Shown here piece by piece: positions 25,536-56,820 of a stretch of DNA of 64,000 nucleotides; the first letter of the stretch is position 1; each line of letters opens with the position of its first letter. Both the position numbers and the translations under genes were made by a program. Where the stretch lies: positions 186,001 through 250,000 of IMG/VR virus record IMGVR_UViG_3300043418_000114; one strand, 5' to 3'. Below the pieces are notes generated by a model. The model worked only from the letters and a program-made list of their open reading frames with translations, was not told the origin of the DNA and ran no database searches.

Positions 25536-26051
25536 CTAGCATACTTTACTTTCGTCAATCTTTTCGCACAACGATTCGTACTGTTTAAAACTTACTCCGA
25601 GTGCTTCTAGCCATTTGGTAAAATAACGATCCAGTTCATTGCTTCTGGCATGTTTTCCATAATGATATGTAGCGAAGTCCTTCAGGTTCTGTACCTTATC
25701 AGCAATCAGCATTTCATTGACTTCAAGAATAGGACTCAATTTCAATGGATAATCTGTATCAATCTTGTCGCTTAGATATGCATTGGCAATGTTACGATAT
25801 TCCATCGTTAGGAGCAATACATGTGGCTCAACAAAGGAAGCCATATAGTAGTTCTCTTGCAGGTCTTCATCTGCCTGAAACAATGGATGCAAACAGAATG
25901 CCTTCTTGGTTGTTTCTACTGCACCGATTTCTTTTAGAATAATCAAGCCTTCGTTGATGTGATTAATCAGAGGGACCTGACTGCGCTTGGCAACACGGTC
26001 GCCATAGTGCTTGGCAATCAACTTGTATTCGACAGAATTTTTGATACTCAT
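25536..26051 (-). CDS. HD-domain-like hypothetical protein
   Basis: 'PLINH...AFCLHP...LIADKVQN'. Confidence 0.4.
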   Translation of the reverse strand: MSIKNSVEYKLIAKHYGDRVAKRSQVPLINHINEGLIILKEIGAVETTKKAFCLHPLFQADEDLQENYYMASFVEPHVLLLTMEYRNIANAYLSDKIDTDYPLKLSPILEVNEMLIADKVQNLKDFATYHYGKHARSNELDRYFTKWLEALGVSFKQYESLCEKIDESKVC

Positions 26052-36273: not shown

Positions 36274-37695
36274 TTACGACAAGTCGTAACGTGTCTTCAT
36301 CACTGTCTTCAACATGACGGCTTCTGGTGTGAAGTCTTCCAAGTCGTTAGACAATACAGAAGTTGCTAGTGCTGGGCTAAAGCCTGACACTAGTGCAGTA
36401 CCACTCTTATCGAATGACACTGGTGTGTTACCGTAACTTGCGTTCAAGTTCCAGAAGACAACTTTTGGAAGTGCGTAGCCTGCGGCTTCGTACTTACGTG
36501 CGATCATTTGCATCGCGGTGTCGTCATGCTTAACACATTGGTTAAATTGCATGTCTGAGAAGATAACAAGAGTTTCAGGCATTTCTGCTTGTGGAACACT
36601 GTTTTCTGTCGCAGTCTTCAGGATCTTTTCAAACGCCTTGTGAAGGTCTGTACTCATATCCCAGTTAGACTTGACCATTTGGTCAATCTTTTGGTTGATG
36701 TTACCCTTTAGGTGCATCAATTCTGGCTTGCTTGAGAAGGTCAAGAAGGTATCTTTGAACTTACCCTTGTTCTTATCAGCAAAGTACAAACCTAGGCTAA
36801 CAGCAACTTCCATGCAAGACAGGTTGCTCTTAGAGCCATGACCACCTGCTGGACAAGACATTGAACCAGAAACGTCAACCAGAGGAAGAACGTTTGCATC
36901 GCCAACGTAGTTAGGCATTGCTTCCCATTGCTTTTGGATCAAGTCAGTTTCAGTCTTGTTAAACTGCATCCAACCACCAATACGACCCTTCAGTACGTCA
37001 TATGGGAACACTGCGCCTGCGTTAACCTTAACACCAGCTTCGCCCTTAACGAGCTTAGTTACATATTCAGCGTATGTAGTACCATGACGGCCAAACGCTT
37101 TCTTGTAACGTGCATGTGCCACTGAAGGAACATGTGAGTAGTTGATGTTATCCCAATTTTGGGCACACATTTGTGTTTCAACAACATTAGTAAGGCCGAC
37201 TAGGCTCTTACGATATTGTTTAGGGGTCATTCCGAAGAATTGACGGATTTCACGTGCTACTTCACCTTTACGTGGAGTCCACTTAGCCGCAAGACCGTTA
37301 CCTGCACGTAGTGCATCGCCGAGCATAGTGTATGCCTTGGCCTTCACAGGCTGAGTCTTAAACACTAGCAAGTCGTCGTAACGACCCAATTCTGGAATCT
37401 TAGCCATCAAACGCATTGCGTCTTCTGGGTTAGTCTTTTCCAAGTGAACGAGGATGTCTCGGAAGACTTGACGTTCACCTGAACCACCACGTGCATCACG
37501 TGCCCATTGAGCGATACGCAATGCAAGATCAGAGTTCTCTACATAAGCCGCTGTGAAAGCCGGCACGATGTTTTTACCACGGCTTGCACCGATGTTGTAA
37601 AACAAATCAACACATGCGTTAGCACTTGATTTGCGAGCCTTCATACCATTGGTGGTACGAGTTGATTGATTCTTAACTGCTTCTGCGAATTGCAT
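36274..37695 (-). CDS. DUF2828-like TROVE/Ro-related protein with C-terminal vWA (MIDAS) domain
   Basis: 'ARD.RGG.GER', 'G.YDDL', 'AAKW.PR', DVSGS MIDAS, 'SDMQF', 'VFWNL', 'VSGFS'. Confidence 0.8.
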   Translation of the reverse strand: MQFAEAVKNQSTRTTNGMKARKSSANACVDLFYNIGASRGKNIVPAFTAAYVENSDLALRIAQWARDARGGSGERQVFRDILVHLEKTNPEDAMRLMAKIPELGRYDDLLVFKTQPVKAKAYTMLGDALRAGNGLAAKWTPRKGEVAREIRQFFGMTPKQYRKSLVGLTNVVETQMCAQNWDNINYSHVPSVAHARYKKAFGRHGTTYAEYVTKLVKGEAGVKVNAGAVFPYDVLKGRIGGWMQFNKTETDLIQKQWEAMPNYVGDANVLPLVDVSGSMSCPAGGHGSKSNLSCMEVAVSLGLYFADKNKGKFKDTFLTFSSKPELMHLKGNINQKIDQMVKSNWDMSTDLHKAFEKILKTATENSVPQAEMPETLVIFSDMQFNQCVKHDDTAMQMIARKYEAAGYALPKVVFWNLNASYGNTPVSFDKSGTALVSGFSPALATSVLSNDLEDFTPEAVMLKTVMKTRYDLS

Positions 37696-37722: not shown

Positions 37723-37786
37723 AACAGGATGCGCTTTTAGTTTCATCTATGAATTGAAATTTTAAAGTTTGCTGAATGCATCCTAA
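37723..37786 (-). ncRNA. CAGCA-scaffold RNA copy 1
   Basis: TAGGATGC-ATT-CAGCA...hairpin...GCATCCTG; promoter at 37793-37821. Confidence 0.8.
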
Positions 37787-37838: not shown

Positions 37839-37992
37839 AAACAGGATCGTTGTTGACTGCTTTTTGAATAGGGCCATCACTCCTATTGCGATAGATGCAT
37901 TTCAATAACTACCTTCAAAGTCCGTAGACTCCAGTAGTTACCATGCGATCCATCAGTTCCAATAAAGTAAATTATTGCTGTACCGATCCTAA
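37839..37992 (-). ncRNA. CAGCA-scaffold RNA copy 2 (multi-stem insert)
   Basis: TAGGATCG-GTA-CAGCA...CGATCCTG. Confidence 0.75.
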
Positions 37993-37997
37993 AAATA

Positions 37998-38250
37998 AAC
38001 GGGATGTTTGAACGTAGTTTATTTTATTGTCTGGTTGAGTCTAACTCACCTTTGCAGGACTTACGTTCCTCAACCATATCAACAATTCATGTTGACTATC
38101 TAGTAATTGAGTCTGCTACTAGCAACATAGAATGTCTTTCCATTCTGTCGTCTATTCCCTGAATGCTTAGTTGCCTAAGAGTATTGCTACTGTCTCCCGA
38201 CCACCTTCTATAGCTGATAGTTTGATTTTTAAATGCTGAACACATCCCAG
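37998..38250 (-). ncRNA. CAGCA-scaffold RNA copy 3 (about 250 nt)
   Basis: TGGGATGT-GTT-CAGCA...ACATCCCG. Confidence 0.7.
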
Positions 38251-40490: not shown

Positions 40491-40610
40491 AACAGGTTCT
40501 CTTTTTTCGTGCTACCACTACACCAACGCGAAGACCAACTCGCGCCTGGGATTCGAACCCAGCCCCTCTTTTTTACAGAAAGATTATTAAGATTGCTGAA
40601 AAGAACCTAA
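40491..40610 (-). ncRNA. CAGCA-scaffold RNA copy 4, enclosing a circularly permuted tRNA-Tyr(GTA)-like domain
   Basis: TAGGTTCT-TTT-CAGCA, anticodon arm TCTTT-CTGTAAA-AAAGA, T arm, closed acceptor, D arm, AGAACCTG. Confidence 0.85.
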
Positions 40611-41200: not shown

Positions 41201-42079
41201 TGGAGCACTGAGAATACATGCTTACCGAGTAACACCTCAGACATTATTACAATCCTTGCGAGACTGCTTTCTTCTGACTTCCACTGCAACCTCTTGCGAG
41301 TATCACAGTCTGTTACCAACATCGCCGTTTTAAGTCAGGCATTAGACTTGACGCTGTATGCTATTCTACGCTTTCTATCCCGTTGACCTTTAGAGCCATT
41401 CACTACCGCTAAGTAGTTACGAAACTTCCTGCATAAACAGATTTCACCTTGCGAGTTACGTCTGACTGGATTATCTTGCGACTCCAGTATTAGATGCTTT
41501 TCACATACAACCGAGACAGACTTTGCTTTTTTAATCGATAGAAGGGATCGAACCTTCAGCCGACTGCTTGAAAATGCAGTTGATCTACCATTGATCTATA
41601 TCAACCTACTGTGATGTGCTGTCTCAGTTGCTTCATAATCTTTTGGACTACAAAATACAACACGCCACGTACCTTTTGTCTCGCGGACTACTCAGTCGTC
41701 TTTCACGATTAATGTCGGGTCTCGGCTTTCGCGTACCTCCATCAACCATTCAAACTGCATTACAACTCTTAGATGCGACTCCTCGAATCATAACACTACC
41801 CTTTCTCATACCAATTAACTGGACTGGTTTTGTCGTGAGGTCAGCACCACCTGTTACTCTCTAATGACTTGCGTTACCCTCGATATTATCTCAGGCGCTT
41901 AAGCCACTAATTCTTTCCACAACTTCCAGCGTCATTGTTATCACCACCGGTCTTATCAGTGATGAAACCCTCGCGGGTTTGAGCAGGCTTGCTTAGATGA
42001 ACTATTTCTAGCGCGGGTCTGTAGGAGACTACCGCTTTGGGCCGATCACTCGGCTTATTCTAATGAGGCTAAGCCCCCA
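41201..42079 (-). ncRNA. GOLLD-like giant structured RNA with an embedded tRNA-Glu-like domain
   Basis: About 880 nt without a credible ORF; many GCAA/GNRA-capped stems; ends GCATGTATTCTCAGTGCTCCA; tRNA-cluster context; cloverleaf at 41533-41605. Confidence 0.65.
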
Positions 42080-42204: not shown

Positions 42205-42309
42205 TTTCTTAACATTGTTGAACATACTAGTGCATTTCCAAATTATGCTACTCCTCATCAGGGATGGAATCGAACCAACATCCCTAATACATTCAACAAT
42301 GCTAAGAAA
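42205..42309 (-). ncRNA. YrlA-topology tRNA-mimic RNA
   Basis: About 25-bp stem enclosing T loop TTCGATT, a short closed acceptor hairpin, then D arm TAGCATAATTTGGAAATGC. Confidence 0.6.
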
Positions 42310-42949: not shown

Positions 42950-43010
42950 AACAGGATGCTTATTTTTCAATTAAAAGTTGAATTATAAGATGTTGCTGGA
43001 CGCATCCTAA
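42950..43010 (-). ncRNA. CAGCA-scaffold RNA copy 5, with a bare Lys(TTT) anticodon stem-loop
   Basis: TAGGATGC-GTC-CAGCA...TTCAA-CTTTTAA-TTGAA...GCATCCTG. Confidence 0.85.
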
Positions 43011-45227: not shown

Positions 45228-45656
45228 TTATTTGTTTTTGCCACACCAAGTGTCAGTCTGTGAATGACAATTGGGACAGAGTAATCTTAAGTTTTTAAAC
45301 TTGTGATTGTGATTATCGCCGTCTATGTGATCTAAATGTAGAGAAATTTCTTTTCCCATCCATTCTTCTAATCCACACGACGAGCATTTGTTATCTAATA
45401 TTTTTTCTTTTAACAAACGCTTTTTCAGTTTTAGTGTTTGATATGTAGGATGCAATCCTTCTAGAATTTCATTCAACTCTATCTTCTTTGCACCACCACC
45501 TATCTTAAAATCTAAACCTAATCTTTTTGCTCTACGCCAAACTGTAACATCTGGCACATTAAAATAATGTGCTAACTTGCTCAAGACTGGCGTAATGTTA
45601 TACTGTTCTATCAATTCAGTATCTGTAAACTTTTCTGTACTATGTTTTTGTTTCAT
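45228..45656 (-). CDS. HNH endonuclease
   Basis: CxxC...LHLDHIDGD..N....NLRLLCPNCH. Confidence 0.88.
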   Translation of the reverse strand: MKQKHSTEKFTDTELIEQYNITPVLSKLAHYFNVPDVTVWRRAKRLGLDFKIGGGAKKIELNEILEGLHPTYQTLKLKKRLLKEKILDNKCSSCGLEEWMGKEISLHLDHIDGDNHNHKFKNLRLLCPNCHSQTDTWCGKNK

Positions 45657-46944: not shown

Positions 46945-47019
46945 TGGTCCGGCGTAGTGGAATCGAACCACTATAATCACTTTAGAAGAATGATGTCCTA
47001 TCCGTTGAACGAACGCCAG
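46945..47019 (-). tRNA. tRNA-Arg(TCT)
   Basis: Loop CTTCTAA; CCA. Confidence 0.88.
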
Positions 47020-47310: not shown

Positions 47311-47871
47311 CTACGAAAGCAAGATTCTAGAATGCTTTGGCACACCTGCCATCAAGTATTCCATTTGGTCTGCAAGAATTGTTCGTTGTTGCAGAATCAT
47401 GTTTTCATAGTGGTTAGGTTCATAAGGAACATAAAGTAGTTCCATACGTGCTTCTTTCAAAGACTTATGACCCTTCTTAGAGTTACATTCCTTACATGCA
47501 GTAACTACGTTCATCCAAGTGTTGTCGCCGCCATGGTACCGAGGTACAATGTGGTCACGGCTTAGATTGTGATAGTTAGGGAAATGTCCACCACAGTATG
47601 CACAAACATACCGGTCACGACCAAACAATGTCTTGTTAGTCAATGCAACATGTGCGTGACGATGTGGGTTATAACCATGACCCTTGATAGCAATAATAGA
47701 AGGAGATTCTAGGTAGCTTAGTGATCCGTCACGTTGTACGCCACCACGATACTTCGCAACAATTTCACCCATAGACCATGCTACGGAGTCAGTTGCGTGA
47801 TATGCAATTGCGTCATCGTTTGAGATCCATTGCCGGGGAACTCCTGAAATATCTAGTGCTAGAACAGCCAT
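47311..47871 (-). CDS. HNH endonuclease (McrA-like)
   Basis: RD..VCAYCG...DHIVP...GG..TW.NVVTACKECN. Confidence 0.88.
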   Translation of the reverse strand: MAVLALDISGVPRQWISNDDAIAYHATDSVAWSMGEIVAKYRGGVQRDGSLSYLESPSIIAIKGHGYNPHRHAHVALTNKTLFGRDRYVCAYCGGHFPNYHNLSRDHIVPRYHGGDNTWMNVVTACKECNSKKGHKSLKEARMELLYVPYEPNHYENMILQQRTILADQMEYLMAGVPKHSRILLS

Positions 47872-48482: not shown

Positions 48483-48572
48483 TGGCAGAGAGTAAGGGAT
48501 TCGAACCCTTGTGCCGCGCTAGCGACCATCACCTTTCCAAGATGCGCCCTTAAGCCTCTCGGGCAACTCTCT
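48483..48572 (-). tRNA. tRNA-Ser(GGA)
   Basis: Loop TTGGAAA; long V arm; CCA. Confidence 0.85.
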
Positions 48573-48577
48573 ATATT

Positions 48578-48676
48578 TGGTGCCTCTGGCAGGACTCGAA
48601 CCTGCACACTGTGGCTTATCTAGCCACTGCTTTGGGGAGGTATAAGCTCCCTTCTTTACCATTAAGCTACAGAGGC
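48578..48676 (-). tRNA. tRNA with TAT anticodon (Ile AUA) and about 29-nt variable region
   Basis: GGGAG-CTTATAC-CTCCC; V hairpin GTGGCT-AGATA-AGCCAC; A73; CCA. Confidence 0.75.
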
Positions 48677-49881: not shown

Positions 49882-50244
49882 TTAAATTGTTTTATATCTT
49901 TTATCTTTTTGCTTGTGTTCTACGTCCCACTTGATTGCGGCGCCAGAACAAAACTTTTCATCTTTCCAGAATCTTGCTCCATTCAATATGAATGGCTTCA
50001 ATACTCTATCACCGTTCCACCAACCACGTTGGCATTTAATGAAGCCTTTTGCTTCTAATTCGTTTCGTAGTTCTTTGAACTCTGGATGATCATCATGTGA
50101 CAATGACTTACATCGATCCTCGCCCTTGATAATCTTAATCAATTGATCTGGTGTTAGTTCGTTTACTGGAATGTGATCATACATTCCCCACTCTTTTTCA
50201 ATCTTAACATCACATAATGAATTCATGTCGATTTCAAACTTCAT
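49882..50244 (-). CDS. Hypothetical protein
   Basis: GGAGG SD before MKFEID. Confidence 0.6.
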   Translation of the reverse strand: MKFEIDMNSLCDVKIEKEWGMYDHIPVNELTPDQLIKIIKGEDRCKSLSHDDHPEFKELRNELEAKGFIKCQRGWWNGDRVLKPFILNGARFWKDEKFCSGAAIKWDVEHKQKDKRYKTI

Positions 50245-50410
50245 GCTTCCTCCATTGTAGGTTTTTGAGCGCCCAACTATCTTTCTCAAGGACTCACTGG
50301 ATTGTCTCGTATGAAGGAGTTTAGCAACCTTGTACTGCTACTGGCGTGTCAGTCACAAGAATAGGGACCTAGCGCACAAGGGACTCTACTTCTACGTCTA
50401 TCTCAAAAAT

Positions 50411-50464
50411 TGGTGGTAGGCTTTCCTGGCACATGTAACCAGTAAGGCCCGGGCGCCGCCTACC
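50411..50464 (-). ncRNA. 54-nt T-armless mini-tRNA-like RNA
   Basis: GGTAGGC/GCCTACC-A-CCA acceptor; two small hairpins. Confidence 0.55.
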
Positions 50465-50474
50465 ATAACTCGAA

Positions 50475-50557
50475 TGTGTGTTGTAGGATTCGAACCTACA
50501 TCAGGAGGTTTTTAGGCCTCTTGTAATGATGCCCTAAACATTTATACGAAACACACA
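50475..50557 (-). pseudogene. Degenerate tRNA-like element
   Basis: T arm GTAGG-TTCGAAT-CCTAC; 8-nt loop CCTAAAAA; no CCA. Confidence 0.5.
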
Positions 50558-50561
50558 AAAC

Positions 50562-50819
50562 TGGCTTCGTTAGCAAGACTCGAACTTGCGATAGTGGCTT
50601 CAAATCGCGTATGCTGGGTGCCACCGTGTTTCCCAAAGTTACCCTCGTATCCCCTCTGCTAGTTTATCTCACTTTTCTCACATTTCGACCTGTTCCGCAC
50701 TTCCCGGACTCACAGTGTTTGGTTTTAAAGCCTACGCGATTGTTATCTACTTTGTTTTACTAGTTGCCTTATTAATAGCATACTCAATACTACTCTACCT
50801 TCCTCTACACTATAACGAA
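50562..50819 (-). ncRNA. About 258-nt RNA with tRNA acceptor, T arm and a large internal domain
   Basis: TTCGTTA/TAACGAA-G-CCA; T arm GCAAG-TTCGAGT-CTTGC; internal AATCGCGTA/TACGCGATT. Confidence 0.6.
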
Positions 50820-50826
50820 ATAAAAT

Positions 50827-50902
50827 TGGCACCGTAGACGGGAATCGAACCCGCCGCGTCTTCATAGACAGTGAAGTATCACCCCTAGGTGAACTCTACG
50901 GT
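50827..50902 (-). tRNA. tRNA-Asp(GTC), unusual U37
   Basis: Loop CTGTCTA; G73; CCA. Confidence 0.8.
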
Positions 50903-50907
50903 ATAAA

Positions 50908-51447
50908 TCATTTTACAACATCTTGCCAACGAATGACTAGTGATTTGTCGTAATTTTGAGTTTTGTTCTTTCTGCGATTTTCCAATGCAGGAAGATACTG
51001 AAAGTTATCAGGATGATGTAGACCTCCGCATGCCAATGGCACAATATGGTCGACTTCGTATCCAGTTGGACAACTCTCGTAAATTTTTCGAATTAACTGA
51101 CTATCAACGTAATCAGGTGTTGCGTTGTACTTTCTCGCTCTATAGTTTTGTACATTCAACACATTTAATTTTGCAGATTCGTCTTTCGTTTTTCTTCCAA
51201 CTTTATCCCAATAAGCTATTCTAGCCTCTGATATTTTGGCAGAATGTTCTGCTGTTCTCGGCTTAAGTTTCTTTCCTTTGGTACTGGTTTGCTTAATTGA
51301 ACCAGAAGCAATTCCTTCTTTAACCGAGTTGGCTATTTTTCGTTTCGTTTCATCGGATCTAACTCTAGAGTTAGCACACGGTCTACAACAATACTTTCCT
51401 GATCCATATGATCCATCATGTTCACTATTACATTTGAGGCAAAACAT
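50908..51447 (-). CDS. HNH homing-endonuclease-like protein
   Basis: N-terminal Cys motifs; NUMOD-like basic helices; 'EVDHIVPL..GGLH...N.QYL...ENRRK'. Confidence 0.82.
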   Translation of the reverse strand: MFCLKCNSEHDGSYGSGKYCCRPCANSRVRSDETKRKIANSVKEGIASGSIKQTSTKGKKLKPRTAEHSAKISEARIAYWDKVGRKTKDESAKLNVLNVQNYRARKYNATPDYVDSQLIRKIYESCPTGYEVDHIVPLACGGLHHPDNFQYLPALENRRKNKTQNYDKSLVIRWQDVVK

Positions 51448-51496
51448 ATTAAATTCCTTTAATATATTTATCGAACCTCGCTCATTCTTTAGTTTT

Positions 51497-51572
51497 TGGC
51501 TCCCCAGGATGGGATCGAACCACCGACATCCTGATTAACAGTCAGGCGCAACTACCGCTGTGCTACTGGGGA
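51497..51572 (-). tRNA. tRNA-Asn(GTT), second copy
   Basis: Loop CTGTTAA; CCA. Confidence 0.92.
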
Positions 51573-51580
51573 ATAATTCT

Positions 51581-51655
51581 TGGTGCCTCCACCTGGGCTC
51601 GAACCAGGGACTCCCACCTTATCAAGATGATACTCTACCACTGAGTTATAGAGGC
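51581..51655 (-). tRNA. tRNA-Ile(GAT)
   Basis: Loop TTGATAA; CCA. Confidence 0.88.
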
Positions 51656-51665
51656 AATTAATTGT

Positions 51666-51739
51666 TGGTACCCAGTGCAAGAATTGAACTTGCGTCTATC
51701 GATTATCAGTCGATTGCTCTTCCGTTGAGCTAACCGGGC
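51666..51739 (-). tRNA. tRNA-Ile(GAT), second copy
   Basis: Loop CTGATAA; CCA. Confidence 0.88.
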
Positions 51740-51745
51740 ATTGTT

Positions 51746-51821
51746 TGGTAGATGTGAGTGGATTCGAACCACCGACCTGCTCCGTATGAAGGAGATGCAC
51801 TAGCCGCTGTGCTACACATCC
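51746..51821 (-). tRNA. tRNA-Met(CAT)
   Basis: Loop TTCATAC; CCA. Confidence 0.85.
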
Positions 51822-51827
51822 ATTGTA

Positions 51828-51902
51828 TGGTGCTCCTTGACAGAATCGAACTGCCACCCCTAGATTACAAAACTAGTCCACTACCATTATGATTAAAAGA
51901 GC
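51828..51902 (-). tRNA. tRNA-Thr(TGT), second copy
   Basis: Loop TTTGTAA; CCA. Confidence 0.85.
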
Positions 51903-51908
51903 AAATAA

Positions 51909-52022
51909 AACAGGATACATTCTTGACGAATGCTCTACCAATTGAGCTAATCTCGCATGAAGCGAAATGTTGGAATCGAACCAACGACACATCGTTTGAT
52001 GTAGTTTGCTGTATGTATCCTA
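51909..52022 (-). ncRNA. CAGCA-scaffold RNA copy 6, with a permuted T-acceptor-D tRNA mimic
   Basis: TAGGATAC-ATA-CAGCA, tetraloop hairpin, GTTGG-TTCGATT-CCAAC, closed acceptor, TAGCTCAATTGGTAGAGC, GTATCCTG. Confidence 0.85.
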
Positions 52023-52026
52023 AAAT

Positions 52027-52146
52027 TGGCGCCGCCGGAGGGATTCGAACCCCCATCTCTTCCTTGACATGGAATTTTTATATGCTGAACGTACTCTGTA
52101 CAGAGTCACTTTTTATAAGTGTCCTGATCCATTAGACGACAGCGGC
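52027..52146 (-). tRNA. tRNA-Asp(GTC)-like gene with a permuted CAGCA scaffold inserted between the D and anticodon arms
   Basis: GCCGCTG/CGGCGGC-G-CCA; insert ...ACTCTGT-AC-AGAGTAC-GTT-CAGCA-TATAAAAA; TTCC-ATGTCAA-GGAA. Confidence 0.75.
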
Positions 52147-52153
52147 GATAAAT

Positions 52154-52227
52154 TGGTGCGGGGTAAGGGAGTTGAACCCTTGACTAAACGTTGGCAACGT
52201 TTGATTTTACCGTTAAACTAACCACGC
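52154..52227 (-). tRNA. tRNA-Gly(GCC), second copy (A73)
   Basis: Loop TTGCCAA; CCA. Confidence 0.82.
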
Positions 52228-52235
52228 ATAAAAAC

Positions 52236-52312
52236 TGGAATACGGAGTGAGATTTGAACTCACGAATAACTGGTTTGCAATCAGTCCCCTTAGGCCGCTC
52301 GGGCATCCGTAC
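52236..52312 (-). tRNA. tRNA-Cys(GCA), second copy
   Basis: Loop TTGCAAA; U73; CCA. Confidence 0.85.
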
Positions 52313-52322
52313 ATAAATTGAT

Positions 52323-52398
<76 letters not shown>

Positions 52399-52409
52399 AA
52401 ATTCACTTA

Positions 52410-52486
52410 GGGGTGACCGGTGGGACTTGAACCCACAAAAACCTGAGTCACAGTCAGGGTCGTCTACCAATTCCGACACGGCCACA
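52410..52486 (-). tRNA. tRNA-His(GTG), no encoded CCA, extended flanking stem
   Basis: Loop CTGTGAC; C73; flanks TTTACTTAGG/CCTAAGTGAA pair. Confidence 0.8.
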
Positions 52487-52510
52487 CCTAAGTAAACTTA
52501 GGAGAAATAA

Positions 52511-52571
52511 AACAGGATGCGTTTTTGCTTTTTACCAATAAAAGTTTTTTTAATTGCTGAATGCATCCTAA
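52511..52571 (-). ncRNA. CAGCA-scaffold RNA copy 7
   Basis: TAGGATGC-ATT-CAGCA...CTTTT-ATTGGTA-AAAAG...GCATCCTG. Confidence 0.8.
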
Positions 52572-52575
52572 AAAC

Positions 52576-52601
52576 AAAAAACCCTGAGAGGATCAGGGTT
52601 T
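52576..52601 (-). terminator. Intrinsic terminator
   Basis: AAACCCTGA-TCCTC-TCAGGGTTT followed by T-run. Confidence 0.7.
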
Positions 52602-52621
52602 GTAATGTGTTGCAAGTATGT

Positions 52622-53275
52622 TTACTTTTTAGGATAAACATACAGTTTTTGCAAGTCTGGTCTTTCAGGTTCTAACCACTCGCCTTTCTTGCACATAGCA
52701 ATGATGCTTTTTGGGCATCCTGCTAACTCTAATTGTGTATAAGAACTAAGTCCTCTACCTTGAATTTTAGGTTGCATATGACATGGCTGAGGAACTTCTC
52801 TCCAATAACCGGTGCCATTGTCTACACCTGATGCAATGTAGTTAGTGTATTCTGCTTTGATACCAGGACGAAAATAAATTGTCAAGCCACGATCAGGTGT
52901 TTCATACACTCTAGGACCATCAACAAATATTTCTGCCATGTCTAAGCATGTCATTACAGCAGTAGGTCGCTGTAGATGATCTAACCTTGTGCCATCAGGG
53001 CATGCACCGTTGTCTAACTCAGTTTTATCGCCGTTAGGCAACTCCATGAACTCGCCATGCTGAGTTTTGAATTCACCGAACAAGTCTTGGTAATTCTCAC
53101 TGATCCAGTATTTCTCGCGTGTCCAATCTTCATCCCTATCGATGGTAGTAGTCACACCTTTAAACACTTTAATATAGCCACTATCGCCGCCATCAAGTGC
53201 TTCATAAGATAATTCTTTATTGACTGTTAATGTCAATTTCTTTGTATTGTAATCATAAATCCATGGTAAAATCAT
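52622..53275 (-). CDS. Hypothetical protein
   Basis: 217 aa; ATAAATA and GGAG upstream. Confidence 0.65.
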   Translation of the reverse strand: MILPWIYDYNTKKLTLTVNKELSYEALDGGDSGYIKVFKGVTTTIDRDEDWTREKYWISENYQDLFGEFKTQHGEFMELPNGDKTELDNGACPDGTRLDHLQRPTAVMTCLDMAEIFVDGPRVYETPDRGLTIYFRPGIKAEYTNYIASGVDNGTGYWREVPQPCHMQPKIQGRGLSSYTQLELAGCPKSIIAMCKKGEWLEPERPDLQKLYVYPKK

Positions 53276-53315
53276 AGTTCGTCTCCGATACTAGTATTTA
53301 TAGATTAATGAATAA

Positions 53316-53392
53316 TGGCGCCACCGAAGAGATTCGAACTCCTGACTCCTTCGTTCGTAGCGAAGTACTCTAATCCACTGAGTTACGGCGGC
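53316..53392 (-). tRNA. tRNA-Arg(ACG)
   Basis: Loop CTACGAA; CCA. Confidence 0.9.
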
Positions 53393-53399
53393 ATAATAT

Positions 53400-53501
53400 A
53401 ACAGGATAGTTGTTTTGCAGGGGGAATTGAACCCCCAAGGTTTGATTAGAAGTCAAATTGTGAACCGTTCACATGCGTATTGTTTGCTGTAACTATCCTA
53501 A
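53400..53501 (-). ncRNA. CAGCA-scaffold RNA copy 8, enclosing D-like, Arg(TCT) anticodon and T arms
   Basis: TAGGATAG-TTA-CAGCA...TTTGA-CTTCTAA-TCAAA, GGGGG-TTCAATT-CCCCC...CTATCCTG. Confidence 0.85.
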
Positions 53502-53504
53502 AAC

Positions 53505-53579
53505 TGGCATCCTGTACGGGAATCGAACCCGTCTTTATGACTTGAAAGGCCATCGTTCTTACCGATAAACTAACAGGAT
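53505..53579 (-). tRNA. tRNA-Glu(TTC), second copy
   Basis: Loop CTTTCAA; G73; CCA. Confidence 0.88.
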
Positions 53580-53689
53580 ATTAATTCGTTCCCGTGCTAC
53601 GACTTTTACGCAACGACCGTAGTGCCCGATCTCGCAAGTTGCTCCGGACGGGAGTAGAGCAACGTTGTCTTCTTTCTGGCCAGAAATAC

Positions 53690-53765
53690 TGGCACCCCGT
53701 GATGGACTCGAACCACCGCATGTCGGAATCAAAATCCGATGCCTTACCAACTTGGCGAACAGGGT
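53690..53765 (-). tRNA. tRNA-Gln(TTG)
   Basis: Loop TTTTGAT; CCA. Confidence 0.9.
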
Positions 53766-53771
53766 ATAATT

Positions 53772-53846
53772 TGGTGGAAGCCGAGGGAGTTGAACCCTTC
53801 TAGACAGCGATCTTGCAAGGATCACCCGTAGCCCGCTACTGCCCCC
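53772..53846 (-). tRNA. Atypical tRNA-Ala(TGC)
   Basis: G3:U70; loop CTTGCAA; short D arm; CCA. Confidence 0.7.
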
Positions 53847-53853
53847 AATTGTA

Positions 53854-53931
53854 TGGCGTCCACCGTCGGTATCACACCGCACTCCAAGTCAGCTGGTAAG
53901 TGCTGACCTACGTATCTCACGTTGAGTGGAC
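53854..53931 (-). ncRNA. Aberrant cloverleaf RNA ending in CCA
   Basis: GTCCACT/GGTGGAC-G-CCA; 8-bp central arm with 8-nt loop; non-canonical T loop. Confidence 0.5.
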
Positions 53932-54050
53932 TGTCTTATACTTCCATCGTTGCCACCACAGCATTGACTACTCATATAAGCACTAACTTGAATAGACGCT
54001 ACCGGGCATTAATATCCGCCCGTATCACAGTTAGTTGGTCTACATAAACT

Positions 54051-54137
54051 TGGTGGAACCCTAAGGAATCGAACCTCTTGCCACCACCCACCTTATTATG
54101 GCTACGATTTTACAGACCGCAAGCGGGAAAGGGCTCC
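54051..54137 (-). tRNA. D-armless tRNA-Tyr(GTA)-like RNA
   Basis: GGAGCCC/GGGTTCC-A-CCA; loop CTGTAAA; T arm; D arm replaced by TTTCCCGCTT. Confidence 0.65.
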
Positions 54138-54148
54138 ATTAAATTGTT

Positions 54149-54222
54149 TGGTCTGGGTGGCAAGAATCGAACTTGCTCCTCGAGTATCCAAGACTCGCCG
54201 ACTTCCATTATCCTACACCCAG
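54149..54222 (-). tRNA. tRNA-Pro(TGG), second copy (A37)
   Basis: Loop CTTGGAT; CCA. Confidence 0.82.
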
Positions 54223-54238
54223 ATTGATAAATACTATT

Positions 54239-54802
54239 ATGAATACACAAAAACTACGCCAACTAATGAATCTATGCGAGGGTCGTAACCCTGATCTAGA
54301 ATATCAAGACGCAGAAGATAAAGTCATTGCTAGACTTCAAAGTTATAAGAGTCAATCTTATACTAAACTTGCTCAAAAAGTCAACCGCATCAAAGAATTA
54401 AAAGATGAGGTCAAGGCCTTAGAGGAAGAAGTCAAACAAGAAACTCGTGAAAACATCAATGATTTGTTTGATGCCGAAGATGCTGTAAAAACACGCATCG
54501 TTGAAACTATGAGTTTTATTCTTACTCTAAGCAAGAATCCAAAAGCTACAGAAACTCCTAAGTACAAGGACATTCTGAATGAACTTACTAATCACTTGAC
54601 TCCAGAGTTGATTAACGTCCTAGAAGGTCTTAAGAAACAAATGGTTACTGTTACTCAGAAAGAACCATCATTGAAAATTGAACCACTTAAGGAAGGTTTC
54701 TTAGGCTCATACTTTGCACGTTTGAAAAACGCTGTTATGAGTTGGGGTCAACGTTATGACCAGAAACTCGATAACTTAAAGCGTTTAGCTTACTCAAAAT
54801 AA
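54239..54802 (+). CDS. Hypothetical coiled-coil protein
   Basis: ATAAATA immediately upstream; 187 aa. Confidence 0.65.
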   Translation: MNTQKLRQLMNLCEGRNPDLEYQDAEDKVIARLQSYKSQSYTKLAQKVNRIKELKDEVKALEEEVKQETRENINDLFDAEDAVKTRIVETMSFILTLSKNPKATETPKYKDILNELTNHLTPELINVLEGLKKQMVTVTQKEPSLKIEPLKEGFLGSYFARLKNAVMSWGQRYDQKLDNLKRLAYSK

Positions 54803-54804
54803 GT

Positions 54805-54882
54805 TGGCAGAGGTAACTGGATTCGAACCAGTGTTCACGATTTCAAAGACCGTAGCTTTAGGCCAGACTAAGCTATACCCCA
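54805..54882 (-). tRNA. tRNA-Gln(TTG), second copy
   Basis: U1; loop CTTTGAA; G73; CCA. Confidence 0.85.
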
Positions 54883-55342
54883 ACAAAAAACGCTATTCAT
54901 TAGTATACAGGACATAAGGCCGTCAGGAGGCGAAATGCAGTGTTCATCCTATGATACTAGTGAATAGCATCTTGCGATGCTATGCTAGAGTCAATGCTCT
55001 AGCCAGTTATTTGTACTCCCGGGTTCTCGCCCACGGTTTCATCCAACTGTCCGCCCGTTCAAAGTTTATTATAGTGTTCTTTCAGGACCTCGTTTCCTGG
55101 GCTTACGCTCTTATTCAACACTGTTAATCAGCATAGTTTACTAGCTTTTTCAAACTAGCTAACTTTTCCTGATCCTTTTTCGCTCTCTCATACTTGTTTC
55201 GCATGAGAATTCTAACTTGTTCTTTTGACAGAGTATGGTTCTTTAACCAGTTATCTTTGTCAGAAGAACTTAATCTTATTTCATCCTTCAATTTTTATCA
55301 ATCTTTCTTTTTGTTCTGTTGTATTTTTGCTACATTCAAAAC

Positions 55343-55378
55343 AAAAAACCTCTGGGTTTTTAATCCAGAGGTTTCATA
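55343..55378 (-). terminator. Intrinsic terminator of the putative attenuator
   Basis: AAACCTCTGG-ATTAAAAAC-CCAGAGGTTT followed by TTTG. Confidence 0.8.
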
Positions 55379-55397
55379 ATCTTTTTGGAGTGTTACT

Positions 55398-55571
55398 TTA
55401 AGCGTAACCGTCTCCTTCTATGAAACTCTCTGGTGTTCTCGCATCATAATTGCTCTCTGATCCGCGAATACTAGATAAGCCTGATGTACCAAACGTAGCC
55501 CATACCGGCTGTTGCAATGCGAAAGCATTTAGCCCTGTATGTTTAGCGGTTTGACACATTATGTTTTTCAT
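55398..55571 (-). CDS. Putative 57-aa leader peptide containing an antiterminator strand
   Basis: MKNIMCQTAKHTGLNAFALQQPVWATFGTSGLSSIRGSESNYDARTPESFIEGDGYA; CCAGAGAGTTTCATA (55419-55433) complements the terminator 5' arm. Confidence 0.6.
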   Translation of the reverse strand: MKNIMCQTAKHTGLNAFALQQPVWATFGTSGLSSIRGSESNYDARTPESFIEGDGYA

Positions 55572-55648
55572 AGTAAGTTTATTTATCTCTGATTAAAAAT
55601 TTAGTCATTTAAGACTGGTTTTTTGTTGTTTTTGCAACGTATGAGTGA

Positions 55649-55775
55649 AGTATAACTTGTTTTCGATTAGTTGTCAACAACTTTTTTCGTTAACTTGTCC
55701 AAAACTTCAAAATTCTTTTTTGCTCGATTTCTCAAGCAATGTGTGTAGTATATATCTGTTTTGAGTTGTTGTCAA
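55649..55775 (-). promoter_or_regulatory. Tandem sigma70 promoters heading the tRNA array
   Basis: TTGACA-N17-TATACT at 55747-55775 and 55649-55677. Confidence 0.7.
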
Positions 55776-55791
55776 ACTTTTTTGGACATCT

Positions 55792-56820
55792 TCACAACAA
55801 CCATCGTTGATTCTTCATTGTCCACTCTACAACATCACGAAGTTTATCTTGAAATGTGTACTTTGGTTTCCAACCCAACGATGCCAGATACTCTCCTGAC
55901 AAACTGTAGCGAAAATCATGACCAGGTCGTTGACTATCATTTCCAGTGATTTGATATTGTAGCGTCTTGTTCATCACTGTAGCAATCATTTTGGCAACTG
56001 CTAGATTACTAAATTCCTCATTTGCTGTGATGTTGAATTTAGGACAGGTGATGCCTTCTGTGTTGGATGGCAATGAAAACTGCTTGTGTGGCAGATTCAT
56101 AATGAACAATGTGGCTAGAGCCACGTCTTCTACATAGATCCAATGACGTAGTCCACTCACTGTGCCAGTACTATCGCCATGAATTGTAACAACTTCATCG
56201 TTCGATAACTTATTCATCACTAAACCAATGAACTTTTCTGGATTCTGTCTCTCGCCGAACGTGTTCATAACGTGTAGGCAGTATATTGGCATGCCATACG
56301 TATTCTCATATGCTACGCACAGTTCTTCTGCCGCGGCCTTACTTGCACTATATGGACTACGACTGTTATATCTGTCGTATTCGTTGAAATTTACACCAGC
56401 TGGAGCACTTCCAAAAATCTCATCCGTCCCAAAATAGATGAACTTTTCTAGATTAGGAAGATGATGCCTTGCATATTCCAATAGGTTACATGTGCCTACC
56501 ACGTTGTCTTGAATGAATTGAACTGGATTTTGTATGCTTCTGTCAACGTGACTACCCGCGGCTAGGTGAATAATATAGTCAACGTTGCCTAGTTGTTTGG
56601 CTAGCTGAGGATTAATTTCTGCACGAAGATCATGGTAGATTACTCTAAGATTATGATTTACTGGATCTAACTCATCGCGTATTTCGACTAATCTATTCAG
56701 ATTGCCAGAAAAATCCAGTCTATCCAGACTAGTCACCTGGTAGCCTCTCGACAATAGTTGTTTTATTAGATGATGACCAATGAATCCTGCTCCACCTGTC
56801 ACTAGTACATTTTTACCCAT
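55792..56820 (-). CDS. NDP-sugar 4,6-dehydratase (RmlB/RfbB-like)
   Basis: GGAGFIG, HLAAGSHVDRSI, TDE, YSASK, RPGHD.RY. Confidence 0.9.
   Translation of the reverse strand: MGKNVLVTGGAGFIGHHLIKQLLSRGYQVTSLDRLDFSGNLNRLVEIRDELDPVNHNLRVIYHDLRAEINPQLAKQLGNVDYIIHLAAGSHVDRSIQNPVQFIQDNVVGTCNLLEYARHHLPNLEKFIYFGTDEIFGSAPAGVNFNEYDRYNSRSPYSASKAAAEELCVAYENTYGMPIYCLHVMNTFGERQNPEKFIGLVMNKLSNDEVVTIHGDSTGTVSGLRHWIYVEDVALATLFIMNLPHKQFSLPSNTEGITCPKFNITANEEFSNLAVAKMIATVMNKTLQYQITGNDSQRPGHDFRYSLSGEYLASLGWKPKYTFQDKLRDVVEWTMKNQRWLL

What the first reader, a model, noticed from the sequence alone, without database searches (positions are those of the whole stretch)
53400..53501. Scaffold replacing the acceptor stem of a tRNA-Arg(UCU)-like body
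A third fusion geometry. A D-like hairpin, TTTGA-CTTCTAA-TCAAA and a T arm occur in normal order, but they are closed by the CAGCA scaffold rather than an acceptor/CCA end. This suggests tRNA modules were joined to the scaffold more than once.
Basis: seen in the sequence. Interest (0 to 1): 0.6.

Follow-up and report, generated by a model that had tools for sequence, protein, structure and literature searches.

The report
Phage Y-like RNA carrying tRNA body
This 97-nt element is a conserved small RNA, not a dead tRNA gene: a tRNA-Arg-like body without an acceptor end sits on a scaffold shared by seven neighbouring RNAs, which most likely binds a Ro60-like ring protein encoded nearby, a pairing found in many phages and not described in the sources searched.

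Summary
On the minus strand, 53403-53499 is a 97-nt element. A 9-bp terminal stem and an internal loop carrying UUACAGCAA close a tRNA-like body. The body has a 3-bp stub, a D-like hairpin with GG, a 5-bp/7-nt anticodon arm (CUUCUAA, UCU), a 4-nt variable region and a canonical T arm. There is no acceptor end or CCA.

It is not a decayed tRNA. Twenty-two homologues in phage contigs keep all five helices through compensatory changes (97.6% of cells paired; 18 of 23 pairs changed on both sides).

The same scaffold closes seven other elements in this window: mini hairpins, YrlA-type permuted tRNA-like modules and large modules. Three lie directly upstream of a 473-aa gene (Pfam DUF2828 + DUF7788). 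Its AlphaFold model (pLDDT 92.9) matches full-length only Ro60/TROVE rings.

The pairing of Ro-like gene with stem-NNN-CAGCAA RNAs recurs in 45 of 47 related contigs. It also occurs in cultured phages of E. coli, Mycobacterium, Listeria, Campylobacter, Vibrio and Synechococcus.

Best reading: a Y-RNA-like RNA. The scaffold is the handle for the Ro-like protein and the tRNA-like body is a bait or tether. Binding and expression are inferred. No Rfam family reaches its threshold. The scaffold strikingly resembles Dictyostelium Class I RNAs.

The parts
53403..53499 (-). The element itself (D): scaffold plus a tRNA-Arg(UCU)-like body, 97 nt
   Evidence: CM R1 112.5 bits
53491..53499 (-). 5' strand of the terminal scaffold stem (AGGAUAGUU)
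   Evidence: 7 stem pairs, 4 with changes on both sides, 100% paired
53403..53411 (-). 3' strand of the terminal scaffold stem (AACUAUCCU), followed by conserved GUU at 53400-53402
53484..53489 (-). CAGCAA motif in the internal loop, preceded by UUA; proposed protein-recognition motif
   Evidence: found next to DUF2828 genes in distant phages
53474..53476 (-). 5' strand of the 3-bp stub (GCA), pairing with UGC at 53417-53419; remnant of the acceptor stem stacked on the T stem
   Evidence: GC/AU and CG/UA/AU exchanges
53459..53473 (-). D-like hairpin with the invariant GG of the D loop
   Evidence: 4 of 4 pairs change on both sides; not used to select the homologues
53441..53457 (-). Anticodon-arm mimic UUUGA-CUUCUAA-UCAAA (U33, UCU at 53448-53450, A37)
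53420..53436 (-). T arm GGGGG-UUCAAUU-CCCCC
36274..37695 (-). Gene of the Ro60-like protein (473 aa; Pfam DUF2828 + DUF7788; MIDAS DxSxS at D274/S276/S278)
37726..37784 (-). Scaffold element A (59 nt), between a sigma70-like promoter (TTGACA 37821-37816, TACAAT 37798-37793) and the ribosome-binding site of the Ro-like gene
37843..37990 (-). Scaffold element E (148 nt) with a structured module of unknown kind
38001..38248 (-). Scaffold element H (248 nt; stem GGGAUGU/ACAUCCC)
40494..40608 (-). Scaffold element G: anticodon arm, T arm, closed acceptor hairpin, D arm (permuted, YrlA-type)
42953..43008 (-). Scaffold element F (56 nt) displaying a Lys-like anticodon stem-loop (CUUUUAA)
51912..52021 (-). 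Scaffold element C: permuted tRNA-like module, below-threshold Rfam YrlA hit (31.3 bits)
52514..52569 (-). Scaffold element B (56 nt); best Rfam match is Dictyostelium Class I RNA, 34.5 bits (threshold 41.5)
53505..53579 (-). tRNA-Glu(UUC) directly upstream; its encoded CCA is followed by GUUUU and then the element
53316..53392 (-). tRNA-Arg(ACG) 10 nt downstream; RNase P cleavage at its 5' end would define the element's 3' tail (inferred)

Best explanation
The element is one of at least eight paralogous Y-RNA-like noncoding RNAs of a 364-kb jumbo phage.

Scaffold. The shared scaffold is a terminal stem with a fixed AGG/CCU end, a 3' GUU, and an internal loop with U(A)CAGCAA opposite an A-rich strand. 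It is the binding site for the phage's own Ro60-like ring protein (DUF2828/DUF7788, 36274-37695).

Variable insert. The insert is the effector module. Here it is a tRNA-Arg(UCU)-like L-shaped body with a D/T elbow and an intact anticodon arm. It has no acceptor end, so it cannot be charged or used in translation.

Release. The RNA would be released from the tRNA-array precursor by the enzymes that mature the flanking tRNAs.

Proposed action. It would present a tRNA look-alike on the Ro-like particle as a bait or tether for factors that recognise the anticodon arm or elbow. My preferred version is a decoy or trap for host anticodon-loop nucleases, or recruitment of tRNA repair and quality-control enzymes.

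Shown: the anatomy, the covariation, the recurrence of the scaffold, the Ro60 fold of the neighbouring protein, and the gene-RNA linkage across distant phages.
Inferred: protein-RNA binding, processing, expression and the bait function.
For: 1. Structure is conserved by covariation in 21-22 homologues. On the MAFFT alignment, 95.9% of cells are paired, 15 of 21 pairs change on both sides, and the score is 0.531 against 0.118 in shuffles (0 of 500) and 0.05-0.08 when slid. On the CM alignment, 97.6% are paired and 18 of 23 pairs change on both sides, the stub included.
2. The same scaffold closes eight elements on one strand within 16 kb, and none is convincing elsewhere in the genome.
3. Three scaffold RNAs lie in tandem directly upstream of the DUF2828/DUF7788 gene.
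4. The AlphaFold model (pLDDT 92.9, pTM 0.91) matches Ro60/TROVE structures in its 13 best PDB hits. These include the Thermus phage phiLo Ro60 (E 5e-9) and Xenopus Ro60 (TM 0.63) over the full length. A profile search of PDB sequences also puts Ro60 first. The MIDAS DxSxS motif is invariant.
5. In 45 of 47 related contigs with enough upstream DNA, a scaffold RNA lies within 400 nt upstream of the gene on the same strand. 136 of 141 scaffold hits are on the gene strand.
6. The linkage holds at 33-50% protein identity:
   - metagenomic T4-like contig L178
   - E. coli phage HY02, mycobacteriophage JoeDirt and Vibrio phage nt-1
   - Listeria, Campylobacter and Synechococcus phages
   In nt-1 the scaffold stem contains the gene's own start codon, as expected of an autoregulatory operator.
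7. Established Ro60 systems have the same layout. Y RNAs lie next to the gene, and a terminal stem plus internal loop binds Ro60 beside a tRNA-like module (PMC4201824; PMC12135203).
8. Half of the mini elements carry canonical 5-bp/7-nt anticodon-like hairpins with U33 and R37.
9. In the Listeria phage the gene lies near RtcB and an HD phosphohydrolase. In mycobacteriophage LeBron the Ro-like gene co-occurs with an RNA ligase and a polynucleotide kinase (PMC13148394).
Against: - There is no binding or expression evidence.
- This copy lies 15.7 kb from the protein gene.
- The phage has no detectable RtcB, Rnl1/Rnl2 or CCA-adding enzyme, so a repair partner would have to come from the host.
- No high-scoring D-type copy was found in five cultured phages. 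The unpermuted geometry may be limited to this jumbo-phage lineage.
- Homologues were collected with patterns that demanded CAGCA, a closed stem and paired AC and T arms, which inflates pairing in those helices. The D hairpin and the stub were not selected for.
- The bait or decoy role rests on analogy only.
Confidence: 0.62

Rival explanations
1. A decayed tRNA-Arg(UCU) gene: a pseudogene that lost its acceptor stem and has no function of its own.
For: It sits in a 45-gene tRNA array. The Rfam tRNA model scores 35.8 bits locally. No expression data are available.
Against: - Twenty-two homologues keep every helix through compensatory changes, including the stem that replaces the acceptor.
- The closing stem and CAGCAA loop are shared with seven non-tRNA elements.
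- The body is not a recent copy of any of the 45 tRNAs in the window.
- Anticodon-like triplets differ among homologues while the architecture is kept.
Confidence: 0.03
2. The scaffold is only punctuation of the tRNA-array transcript, either a processing site for RNase III/E/P or a weak terminator. The enclosed tRNA-like parts are incidental.
For: - The elements lie between tRNAs.
- Conserved U-rich flanks: UUUU on the 5' side and GUU(UUAU) on the 3' side.
- Element B starts right after an intrinsic terminator.
Against: - A terminator or cleavage hairpin does not explain an invariant CAGCAA in an asymmetric internal loop, nor inserts of 30-260 nt with their own covarying structure.
- It does not explain tight linkage to the DUF2828 gene in phages where only a few (CPX, LMLPA3) or no tRNA genes are annotated near the gene.
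- The tails are often not U-rich.
Confidence: 0.1
3. The scaffold is bound by a host factor (host Ro60/Rsr, Hfq, ProQ or another RNA chaperone) and not by the phage DUF2828 protein.
For: Binding has not been tested. The motif differs from the GNCGAA motif of TROVE-type Y RNAs, so nothing ties it biochemically to a Ro fold.
Against: Gene-RNA adjacency is kept across phages of six bacterial groups with very different host proteins. In Vibrio phage nt-1 the scaffold overlaps the gene's own start codon.
Confidence: 0.1
4. The scaffold is mainly an autoregulatory operator of the Ro-like gene. The dispersed copies, this one included, merely titrate the protein, and their inserts have no function of their own.
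For: Element A lies between the promoter and the ribosome-binding site. In nt-1 the stem holds the start codon.
Against: The inserts are conserved with covariation and tRNA-specific features (GG of the D loop, T loop, U33/R37) over many phages. That argues for selection on the insert itself. This reading is compatible with the main one for element A only.
Confidence: 0.08
5. An unusual but working tRNA or tRNA precursor. The long stem would be trimmed to give an aminoacylatable end, or the RNA would act on the ribosome.
For: It has a canonical anticodon loop, variable region and T arm.
Against: - Only 3 bp adjoin the T stem, with no linker nucleotides 8-9.
- There is no discriminator or CCA, and the phage has no CCA-adding enzyme.
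- A normal tRNA-Arg(UCU) is already encoded at 46945-47019.
Confidence: 0.02

Closest known systems
Deinococcus radiodurans Yrn1 (Y RNA of the TROVE-type Ro60 orthologue Rsr)
   Same: The terminal stem formed by the 5' and 3' ends is the Ro60 handle. The effector part can be drawn as D-like arm, anticodon-like arm and T arm in normal order, so the handle stands where the acceptor stem would be (PMC4201824).
   Different: - Yrn1 has a 6-nt 'anticodon' loop, no variable region and a doubtful D arm. This element has a canonical 7-nt loop (U33, UCU, A37), a 4-nt variable region, a D-loop GG and a 3-bp acceptor stub.
- The protein partner is TROVE there and DUF2828/DUF7788 here.
- The handle motif is related to GGUCCGA/GNCGAA there and is CAGCAA here.
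YrlA RNAs (Rfam RF02553) of bacteria and some phages
   Same: They are tRNA-mimicking Y RNAs encoded next to a Ro60 gene. Elements C and G of this window have the same permuted order (T arm, closed acceptor hairpin, D arm) and give below-threshold YrlA hits of 31-36 bits.
   Different: - This element is not permuted and has no closed acceptor hairpin.
- No hit reaches the YrlA threshold of 69 bits.
- The GNCGAA motif is absent.
- No TROVE (PF05731) gene is in the genome.
Thermus phage phiLo Ro60 with Yrl1/Yrl2 (PDB 9KOP, 9L5Y; PMC12135203)
   Same: A phage-encoded Ro60 ring with Y-like RNAs just upstream of its gene. It is the best structural match of the protein modelled here.
   Different: The phiLo RNAs carry the CGAA motif and no tRNA-like body is reported. 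Its protein is a TROVE family member at about 17% identity.
Dictyostelium Class I RNAs (Rfam RF01414; PMC7919456)
   Same: - A short terminal stem joins the 5' and 3' ends, with a fixed G:C closing pair.
- A conserved motif lies right after the 5' stem strand: CCUUACAGCAA there, (N)UUACAGCAA here.
- The remainder is variable and A-rich.
- The 3' end is CUGU there and CCUGUU here.
- Length is 42-65 nt, like the mini elements.
- RF01414 is the best Rfam match of elements B, A and L045:1818-1871 (34.5, 26.1 and 35.1 bits).
   Different: - All hits are below the 41.5-bit threshold.
- Class I RNAs are eukaryotic, have their own DUSE promoters, and are said to be confined to Dictyostelia.
- The only protein shown to bind them directly is the RRM protein Rnp1A.
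- No tRNA-like inserts are reported.
- Whether Dictyostelia have a DUF2828 protein could not be tested here.
GOLLD RNA with an embedded tRNA (Rfam RF02032)
   Same: A phage noncoding RNA in the same array (41205-41668) that holds a tRNA-like unit inside a larger closing helix.
   Different: It is unrelated in sequence and size (about 460 nt), has no CAGCAA scaffold and has no known protein partner.

Membership tests
tRNA (Rfam RF00005) | 7-bp acceptor stem with discriminator and CCA end | tested here: not met
   Only a 3-bp stub adjoins the T stem, and there is no CCA. ARAGORN does not call it.
tRNA (Rfam RF00005) | D arm, anticodon arm (7-nt loop, U33, R37), variable region and T arm in order | tested here: met
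   35.8 bits against a threshold of 29 in the local search. The helices covary.
YrlA (Rfam RF02553) | Permuted module: T arm, closed acceptor-like hairpin, then D arm, inside the handle stem | tested here: not met
   The order here is D, anticodon arm, T. There is no YrlA hit on 53385-53510 even at E <= 10. Elements C and G do have that order.
YrlA (Rfam RF02553) | GNCGAA(N)G motif near the 5' end; TROVE-type Ro60 gene within about 4 kb | tested here: not met
   There is no CGAA in the element. No PF05731 match in the 364-kb genome.
Y RNA in the broad sense (RNA partner of a Ro60-fold ring protein) | Terminal stem of the 5' and 3' ends, an internal loop with a conserved motif, and a variable effector module | tested here: met
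Y RNA in the broad sense (RNA partner of a Ro60-fold ring protein) | Encoded next to, and on the strand of, the gene of the ring protein | tested here: met
   Met for the family: 45 of 47 contigs and cultured phages. This copy is 15.7 kb from the gene, whereas its homologue in L046 is 332 nt upstream.
Y RNA in the broad sense (RNA partner of a Ro60-fold ring protein) | Physical binding to the ring protein | not testable with these tools
   Needs RIP/CLIP or gel shift.
Ro60/TROVE proteins (for the partner protein) | HEAT-repeat ring plus a vWA domain with a MIDAS motif | tested here: met
   Foldseek: the 13 best PDB hits are all Ro60/TROVE, TM up to 0.63 over the full length. DxSxS is invariant.
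Ro60/TROVE proteins (for the partner protein) | Match to the Pfam TROVE model PF05731 | tested here: not met
   Pfam gives DUF2828 + DUF7788 and only a weak vWA_Ro60 match. phmmer against PDB finds nothing.
Dictyostelium Class I RNA (Rfam RF01414) | Score at or above the curated threshold (41.5 bits); 42-65 nt; stem, 11-nt motif and CUGU end | tested here: inconclusive
   Mini elements score 26-35 bits, below threshold, yet share the stem, the motif and the 3' end. This element shares the stem, UUACAGCAA and CCUGUU but is 97 nt long with a tRNA body.
Dictyostelium Class I RNA (Rfam RF01414) | Dictyostelid origin with a DUSE promoter | tested here: not met
   Phage genome with bacterial-type tRNAs and a sigma70-like promoter.

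The most novel reading that the evidence does not exclude
The stem-UUACAGCAA scaffold is the universal RNA handle of the DUF2828/DUF7788 branch of Ro60-like proteins. That branch also occurs in eukaryotes. The Class I RNAs of Dictyostelium, whose function has been open since 2004 and which were thought unique to Dictyostelia, would then be the eukaryotic members of the same RNA class, bound by a DUF2828-type protein. The candidate is the uncharacterised pull-down protein DDB_G0281243. In phages the handle has repeatedly captured anticodon stem-loops and whole tRNA bodies, to display tRNA look-alikes against host tRNA-targeting defences.
Probability: 0.3. Interest if true: 0.9.

Novelty: new variant of a known kind. 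Interest (0 to 1): 0.72.

Why it matters
If right, it defines an RNA-protein particle that I found described in neither Rfam nor the papers searched, in hundreds of cultured phages. tblastn finds the protein in 709 phage records. These include Felix O1-like coliphages and Salmonella phages, P100-like Listeria phages and cluster L mycobacteriophages, where it is annotated only as 'hypothetical', 'RNA-binding' or 'Ro-like'.

It gives that protein a partner RNA with a simple searchable signature.

It shows that tRNA parts have been grafted onto one protein handle in at least three geometries. That makes modular tRNA mimicry testable as a phage answer to anticodon nucleases or tRNA damage.

It extends the Ro60/Y RNA principle to a second protein family.

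It offers a concrete, testable lead on what Dictyostelium Class I RNAs bind.

It also flags probable mis-annotation. In phage HY02 a 'hypothetical protein' CDS overlaps one of these RNAs.

Tried and rejected
- Megablast of 50000-56000 against cultured phages found only tRNA matches.
- A first generic stem-plus-CAGCAA scan was too noisy to use.
- The viral-contig pattern was loose. Only 59 of the 119 fetched loci had any pattern hit, several of them chance matches.
- Single-sequence AlphaFold gave pLDDT 37 and was discarded.
- phmmer of the protein against PDB found nothing. NCBIfam found nothing.
- TROVE, RtcB, CCA-adding enzyme and Rnl2 were not found in the genome. The Rnl1 search is uninformative because no control genome matched.
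I tried it by no other tool and did not use read laying, so there is no expression evidence.
- The element's body is not a recent copy of any tRNA in the window.
- The 110-nt gap at 53580-53689 folds no better than shuffles (z = 0.19).
- CM R1 found no strong D-type copy in five cultured phage genomes.
- Contig L176 (protein 42% identical) showed no clear scaffold upstream.
- Avesson et al. 2011 and the supplements of Chen et al. 2014 are not held.
- I could not determine whether Dictyostelium has a DUF2828 protein. The evidence reaches only fungi and plants (titles).

Full report
**Setting.** The window is part of a 364,247-bp phage genome with direct terminal repeats (window = bases 186001-250000). 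Its minus strand between about 39.7 and 54.9 kb carries 45 ARAGORN tRNA genes and a GOLLD RNA. The finding lies between tRNA-Glu(UUC) (53505-53579) and tRNA-Arg(ACG) (53316-53392).

**The observation.** Read on the minus strand, 53403-53499 contains these parts in order:
- a 9-nt stem strand
- ACAGCAAAC
- five further unpaired bases
- GCA
- a hairpin with a GG-containing loop
- UUUGA-CUUCUAA-UCAAA
- CCUU
- GGGGG-UUCAAUU-CCCCC
- UGC
- AAAAC
- the complementary 9-nt stem strand, followed by GUU

The minimum-free-energy fold gives exactly this multiloop: -27.2 kcal/mol, z = -2.98 against 200 shuffles. Searched alone, the region scores 35.8 bits against the Rfam tRNA model, with the acceptor stem reduced to 3 bp. 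ARAGORN and the whole-window Rfam search do not report it. The description is correct: a D/anticodon/T body in normal order, closed by something other than an acceptor stem.

**The scaffold is recurrent.**
- A pattern search of the whole genome found eight elements with the same closure, all on the minus strand between window positions 37.7 and 53.5 kb. The closure is UUUU, AGGnnnn, three bases, CAGCAA, an insert, an A-rich stretch, nnnnCCU and GUU.
- The loose pattern has 19 hits genome-wide against 3.5 +/- 1.5 in block shuffles. The eight clustered ones also share flanks the pattern did not ask for.
- The inserts differ:
  - Small AU-rich inserts in A, B and F. F holds a 5-bp/7-nt hairpin with loop CUUUUAA.
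  - Larger structured modules of unknown kind in E (148 nt) and H (248 nt).
  - A permuted tRNA-like module in C and G: anticodon-like arm, T arm, closed acceptor hairpin, D arm. It gives a below-threshold Rfam YrlA hit (31.3 bits).
  - The unpermuted body of this finding.

**It is conserved, not decayed.**
- Contigs related through the neighbouring protein and a pattern scan of viral contigs yielded 23 candidate sequences with the same D/AC/T-in-scaffold design, one of them a false positive.
- On a plain MAFFT alignment of 21 of them, RNAalifold recovers four helices. With my structure string, 95.9% of cells pair and 15 of 21 pairs change on both sides. The covariation score is 0.531 against 0.118 in shuffles (0 of 500) and 0.05-0.08 when partners are slid.
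- A covariance model built from this alignment finds 22 members at 70-116 bits, two of them new (L057, L041). On its alignment 97.6% of cells pair and 18 of 23 pairs change on both sides.
- Caveat: my collection demanded a closed scaffold stem and paired AC and T arms, so those helices are partly selected.
- The D hairpin and the 3-bp stub were not selected. They covary all the same. The stub occurs as GCA/UGC, GUA/UAC, GCU/AGC, ACA/UGU, UGG/CCA and GAU/AUC.
- The anticodon-like triplet varies among homologues while the frame is kept: UCU in 8, GAA in 4, UUU in 2, GUA in 2, and UAU, CAU, UUC and UCA once each.
- The body is not a recent copy of any tRNA of the window.

**The partner protein.**
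- Elements H, E and A lie in tandem directly upstream of ORF 36274-37695. A sits between a sigma70-like promoter and the ribosome-binding site.
- The 473-aa product matches Pfam DUF2828 (2.9e-24) and DUF7788 (1.2e-48), and faintly vWA_Ro60. It also matches PHROG 850, 'RNA-binding protein'.
- With an alignment of 86 diverse relatives, AlphaFold gives pLDDT 92.9 and pTM 0.91.
- Foldseek against the PDB returns only Ro60/TROVE proteins as its 13 best hits, aligned over the full length. They are Thermus phage phiLo Ro60, Xenopus Ro60 (TM 0.63), Deinococcus Rsr and human Ro60. Ordinary vWA domains follow far behind.
- A profile search of PDB sequences also ranks Ro60 first, at the MIDAS region. The DxSxS motif is invariant.
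- The genome has no TROVE-model match and a single DUF2828 gene.

**Gene-RNA linkage.**
- In 45 of 47 related contigs (61-84% protein identity) with at least 400 nt upstream, a scaffold RNA lies within 400 nt upstream on the gene's strand, usually two or three in tandem.
- The linkage persists far beyond this lineage:

| Phage or contig | Protein identity | Scaffold RNAs by the gene |
|---|---|---|
| T4-like metagenomic contig L178 | 45% | three |
| E. coli phage HY02 (Felixounavirus) | 39% | four, interleaved with its tRNA array, one of YrlA type |
| Mycobacteriophage JoeDirt | 33% | three, one of YrlA type |
| Vibrio phage nt-1 | 42% | one whose stem holds the gene's start codon |
| Listeria phage LMLPA3 | 34% | three |
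| Campylobacter phage CPX | 35% | two |
| Synechococcus phage BUCT-ZZ01 | 50% | three |

- The three of these proteins that were scanned (JoeDirt gp52, HY02 gp045, nt-1 ORF169) are DUF2828 + DUF7788, not TROVE.
- Across these phages the stem sequence changes freely. Even the AGG/CCU end becomes AGA/UCU or other pairs. U(A)CAGCAA three bases after the stem stays.
- The protein is found in 709 cultured phage records.

**Mechanism.**
- Known Ro60 systems work through Y RNAs. Their terminal stem and internal loop bind the ring, and their other module gates or tethers it to partners such as PNPase. Many bacterial Y RNAs carry tRNA-like modules of unknown purpose (PMC4201824; PMC12135203).
- By anatomy and context I assign the same logic here. 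The scaffold is the handle and the tRNA-Arg-like body is the effector. This step is inferred.
- The body keeps what anticodon-arm and elbow readers need and lacks what charging and EF-Tu need.
- Half of the mini elements display canonical anticodon-like hairpins. The most frequent triplets are UUU, UGU, UGA/GGA and GUU, and nearly all have U or A at position 36 followed by AA.
- Relatives of the gene sit near RtcB and an HD phosphohydrolase in Listeria phage. In LeBron the gene accompanies an RNA ligase and a polynucleotide kinase.
- I therefore favour a bait or tether for tRNA-recognising factors in the conflict over tRNA integrity. A decoy for anticodon nucleases is the most specific testable version.
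- Release from the array transcript by maturation of the flanking tRNAs is inferred from the 5-nt and 10-nt spacers.

**Comparison with what is known.**
- The geometry, with the handle in place of the acceptor stem, has a precedent in Deinococcus Yrn1, which is much less tRNA-like.
- C and G resemble YrlA but stay far below its threshold.
- No Rfam family reaches its threshold on any scaffold element.
- Searches of the paper library for DUF2828, Ro-like, YrlA with phage, and GOLLD with Y RNA found no description of these RNAs.
- Annotators already call the protein 'Ro-like' in mycobacteriophages.

**Dictyostelium Class I RNAs.**
- The best Rfam match of three mini elements is the Dictyostelium Class I RNA model, at 34.5, 35.1 and 26.1 bits against a threshold of 41.5.
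- The shared traits are those that define Class I RNAs. These are a short terminal stem with a fixed G:C pair, an 11-nt motif CCUUACAGCAA right after the 5' stem strand, a variable remainder and a CUGU 3' end (PMC7919456).
- In L178 and the Listeria phage the match to the motif reaches 9-10 of 11 bases.
- DUF2828/DUF7788 proteins also occur in eukaryotes (fungi; plant papers).
- One of four proteins pulled down with a Class I RNA, DDB_G0281243, is uncharacterised.
- Whether it is a DUF2828 protein could not be checked here, so this remains a lead.

**Verdict.** The element is a member of a large family of phage Y-like RNAs tied to a Ro60-fold protein of the DUF2828 family, not described in the sources searched. 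It is a new variant of a known kind. Binding, expression and the bait function remain to be shown.

Noticed in passing
window 52514-52569(-), 37726-37784(-); L045:1818-1871: The mini scaffold elements best match the Rfam Dictyostelium Class I RNA model (34.5, 26.1 and 35.1 bits; threshold 41.5). They share its terminal stem, its UUACAGCAA motif and its CUGU-type 3' end.
   Followed up: partly
window 41205-41668(-): GOLLD RNA (203.5 bits) inside the tRNA array. It embeds a tRNA-like unit (41532-41606) that ARAGORN reads with a four-base anticodon 'tttc'.
   Followed up: no
window 42206-42305(-): A further YrlA-like tRNA mimic (Rfam YrlA 32.3 bits, below threshold). It is closed by a different 10-bp stem and has no CAGCAA motif.
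   Followed up: no
window 37843-37990(-) and 38001-38248(-): Two large scaffold elements (148 and 248 nt) hold structured inserts that match no Rfam family. Their counterparts (about 150-165 nt and 195-285 nt) are conserved in the same order upstream of the Ro-like gene in many related contigs.
   Followed up: partly
L181 (Vibrio phage nt-1) 2456-2496; window 37726-37784: The gene-proximal scaffold copy overlaps the ribosome-binding site and start codon (nt-1) or lies 29-32 nt before the start codon (this phage and its relatives). This suggests autoregulation of the Ro-like gene.
   Followed up: partly
all scaffold elements (226 distinct): Anticodon-like loops in the inserts almost always have U or A at position 36 followed by A37 A38. 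These are the t6A- and i6A-type contexts. Anticodons ending in C or G are nearly absent.
   Followed up: partly
L187 (E. coli phage HY02, NC_028872 25514-26197): Four unannotated scaffold RNAs sit among the 25 tRNAs found by ARAGORN, which the RefSeq feature table for this stretch does not list. The annotated 'hypothetical protein' gp046 (25420-25635, opposite strand) overlaps one of them and may be spurious.
   Followed up: partly
L182 (Listeria phage LMLPA3) 3609-4491: An HD phosphohydrolase and an RtcB-type RNA ligase lie just downstream of the Ro-like gene, echoing the bacterial rsr-yrlA-rtcB arrangement.
   Followed up: no
window 47311-47871(-) and 45228-45656(-): HNH endonuclease ORFs are interspersed in the tRNA array.
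   Followed up: no
window 48578-48676(-), 48483-48572(-), 51831-51902(-), 50475-50556(-): Unusually long tRNA calls (Glu-CUC 99 nt, Pro-UGG 90 nt), and two Rfam tRNA hits that ARAGORN does not report.
   Followed up: no
L043:17820-18170: A related phage contig carries a permuted tmRNA (Rfam 111.6 bits) downstream of its tRNA array.
   Followed up: no
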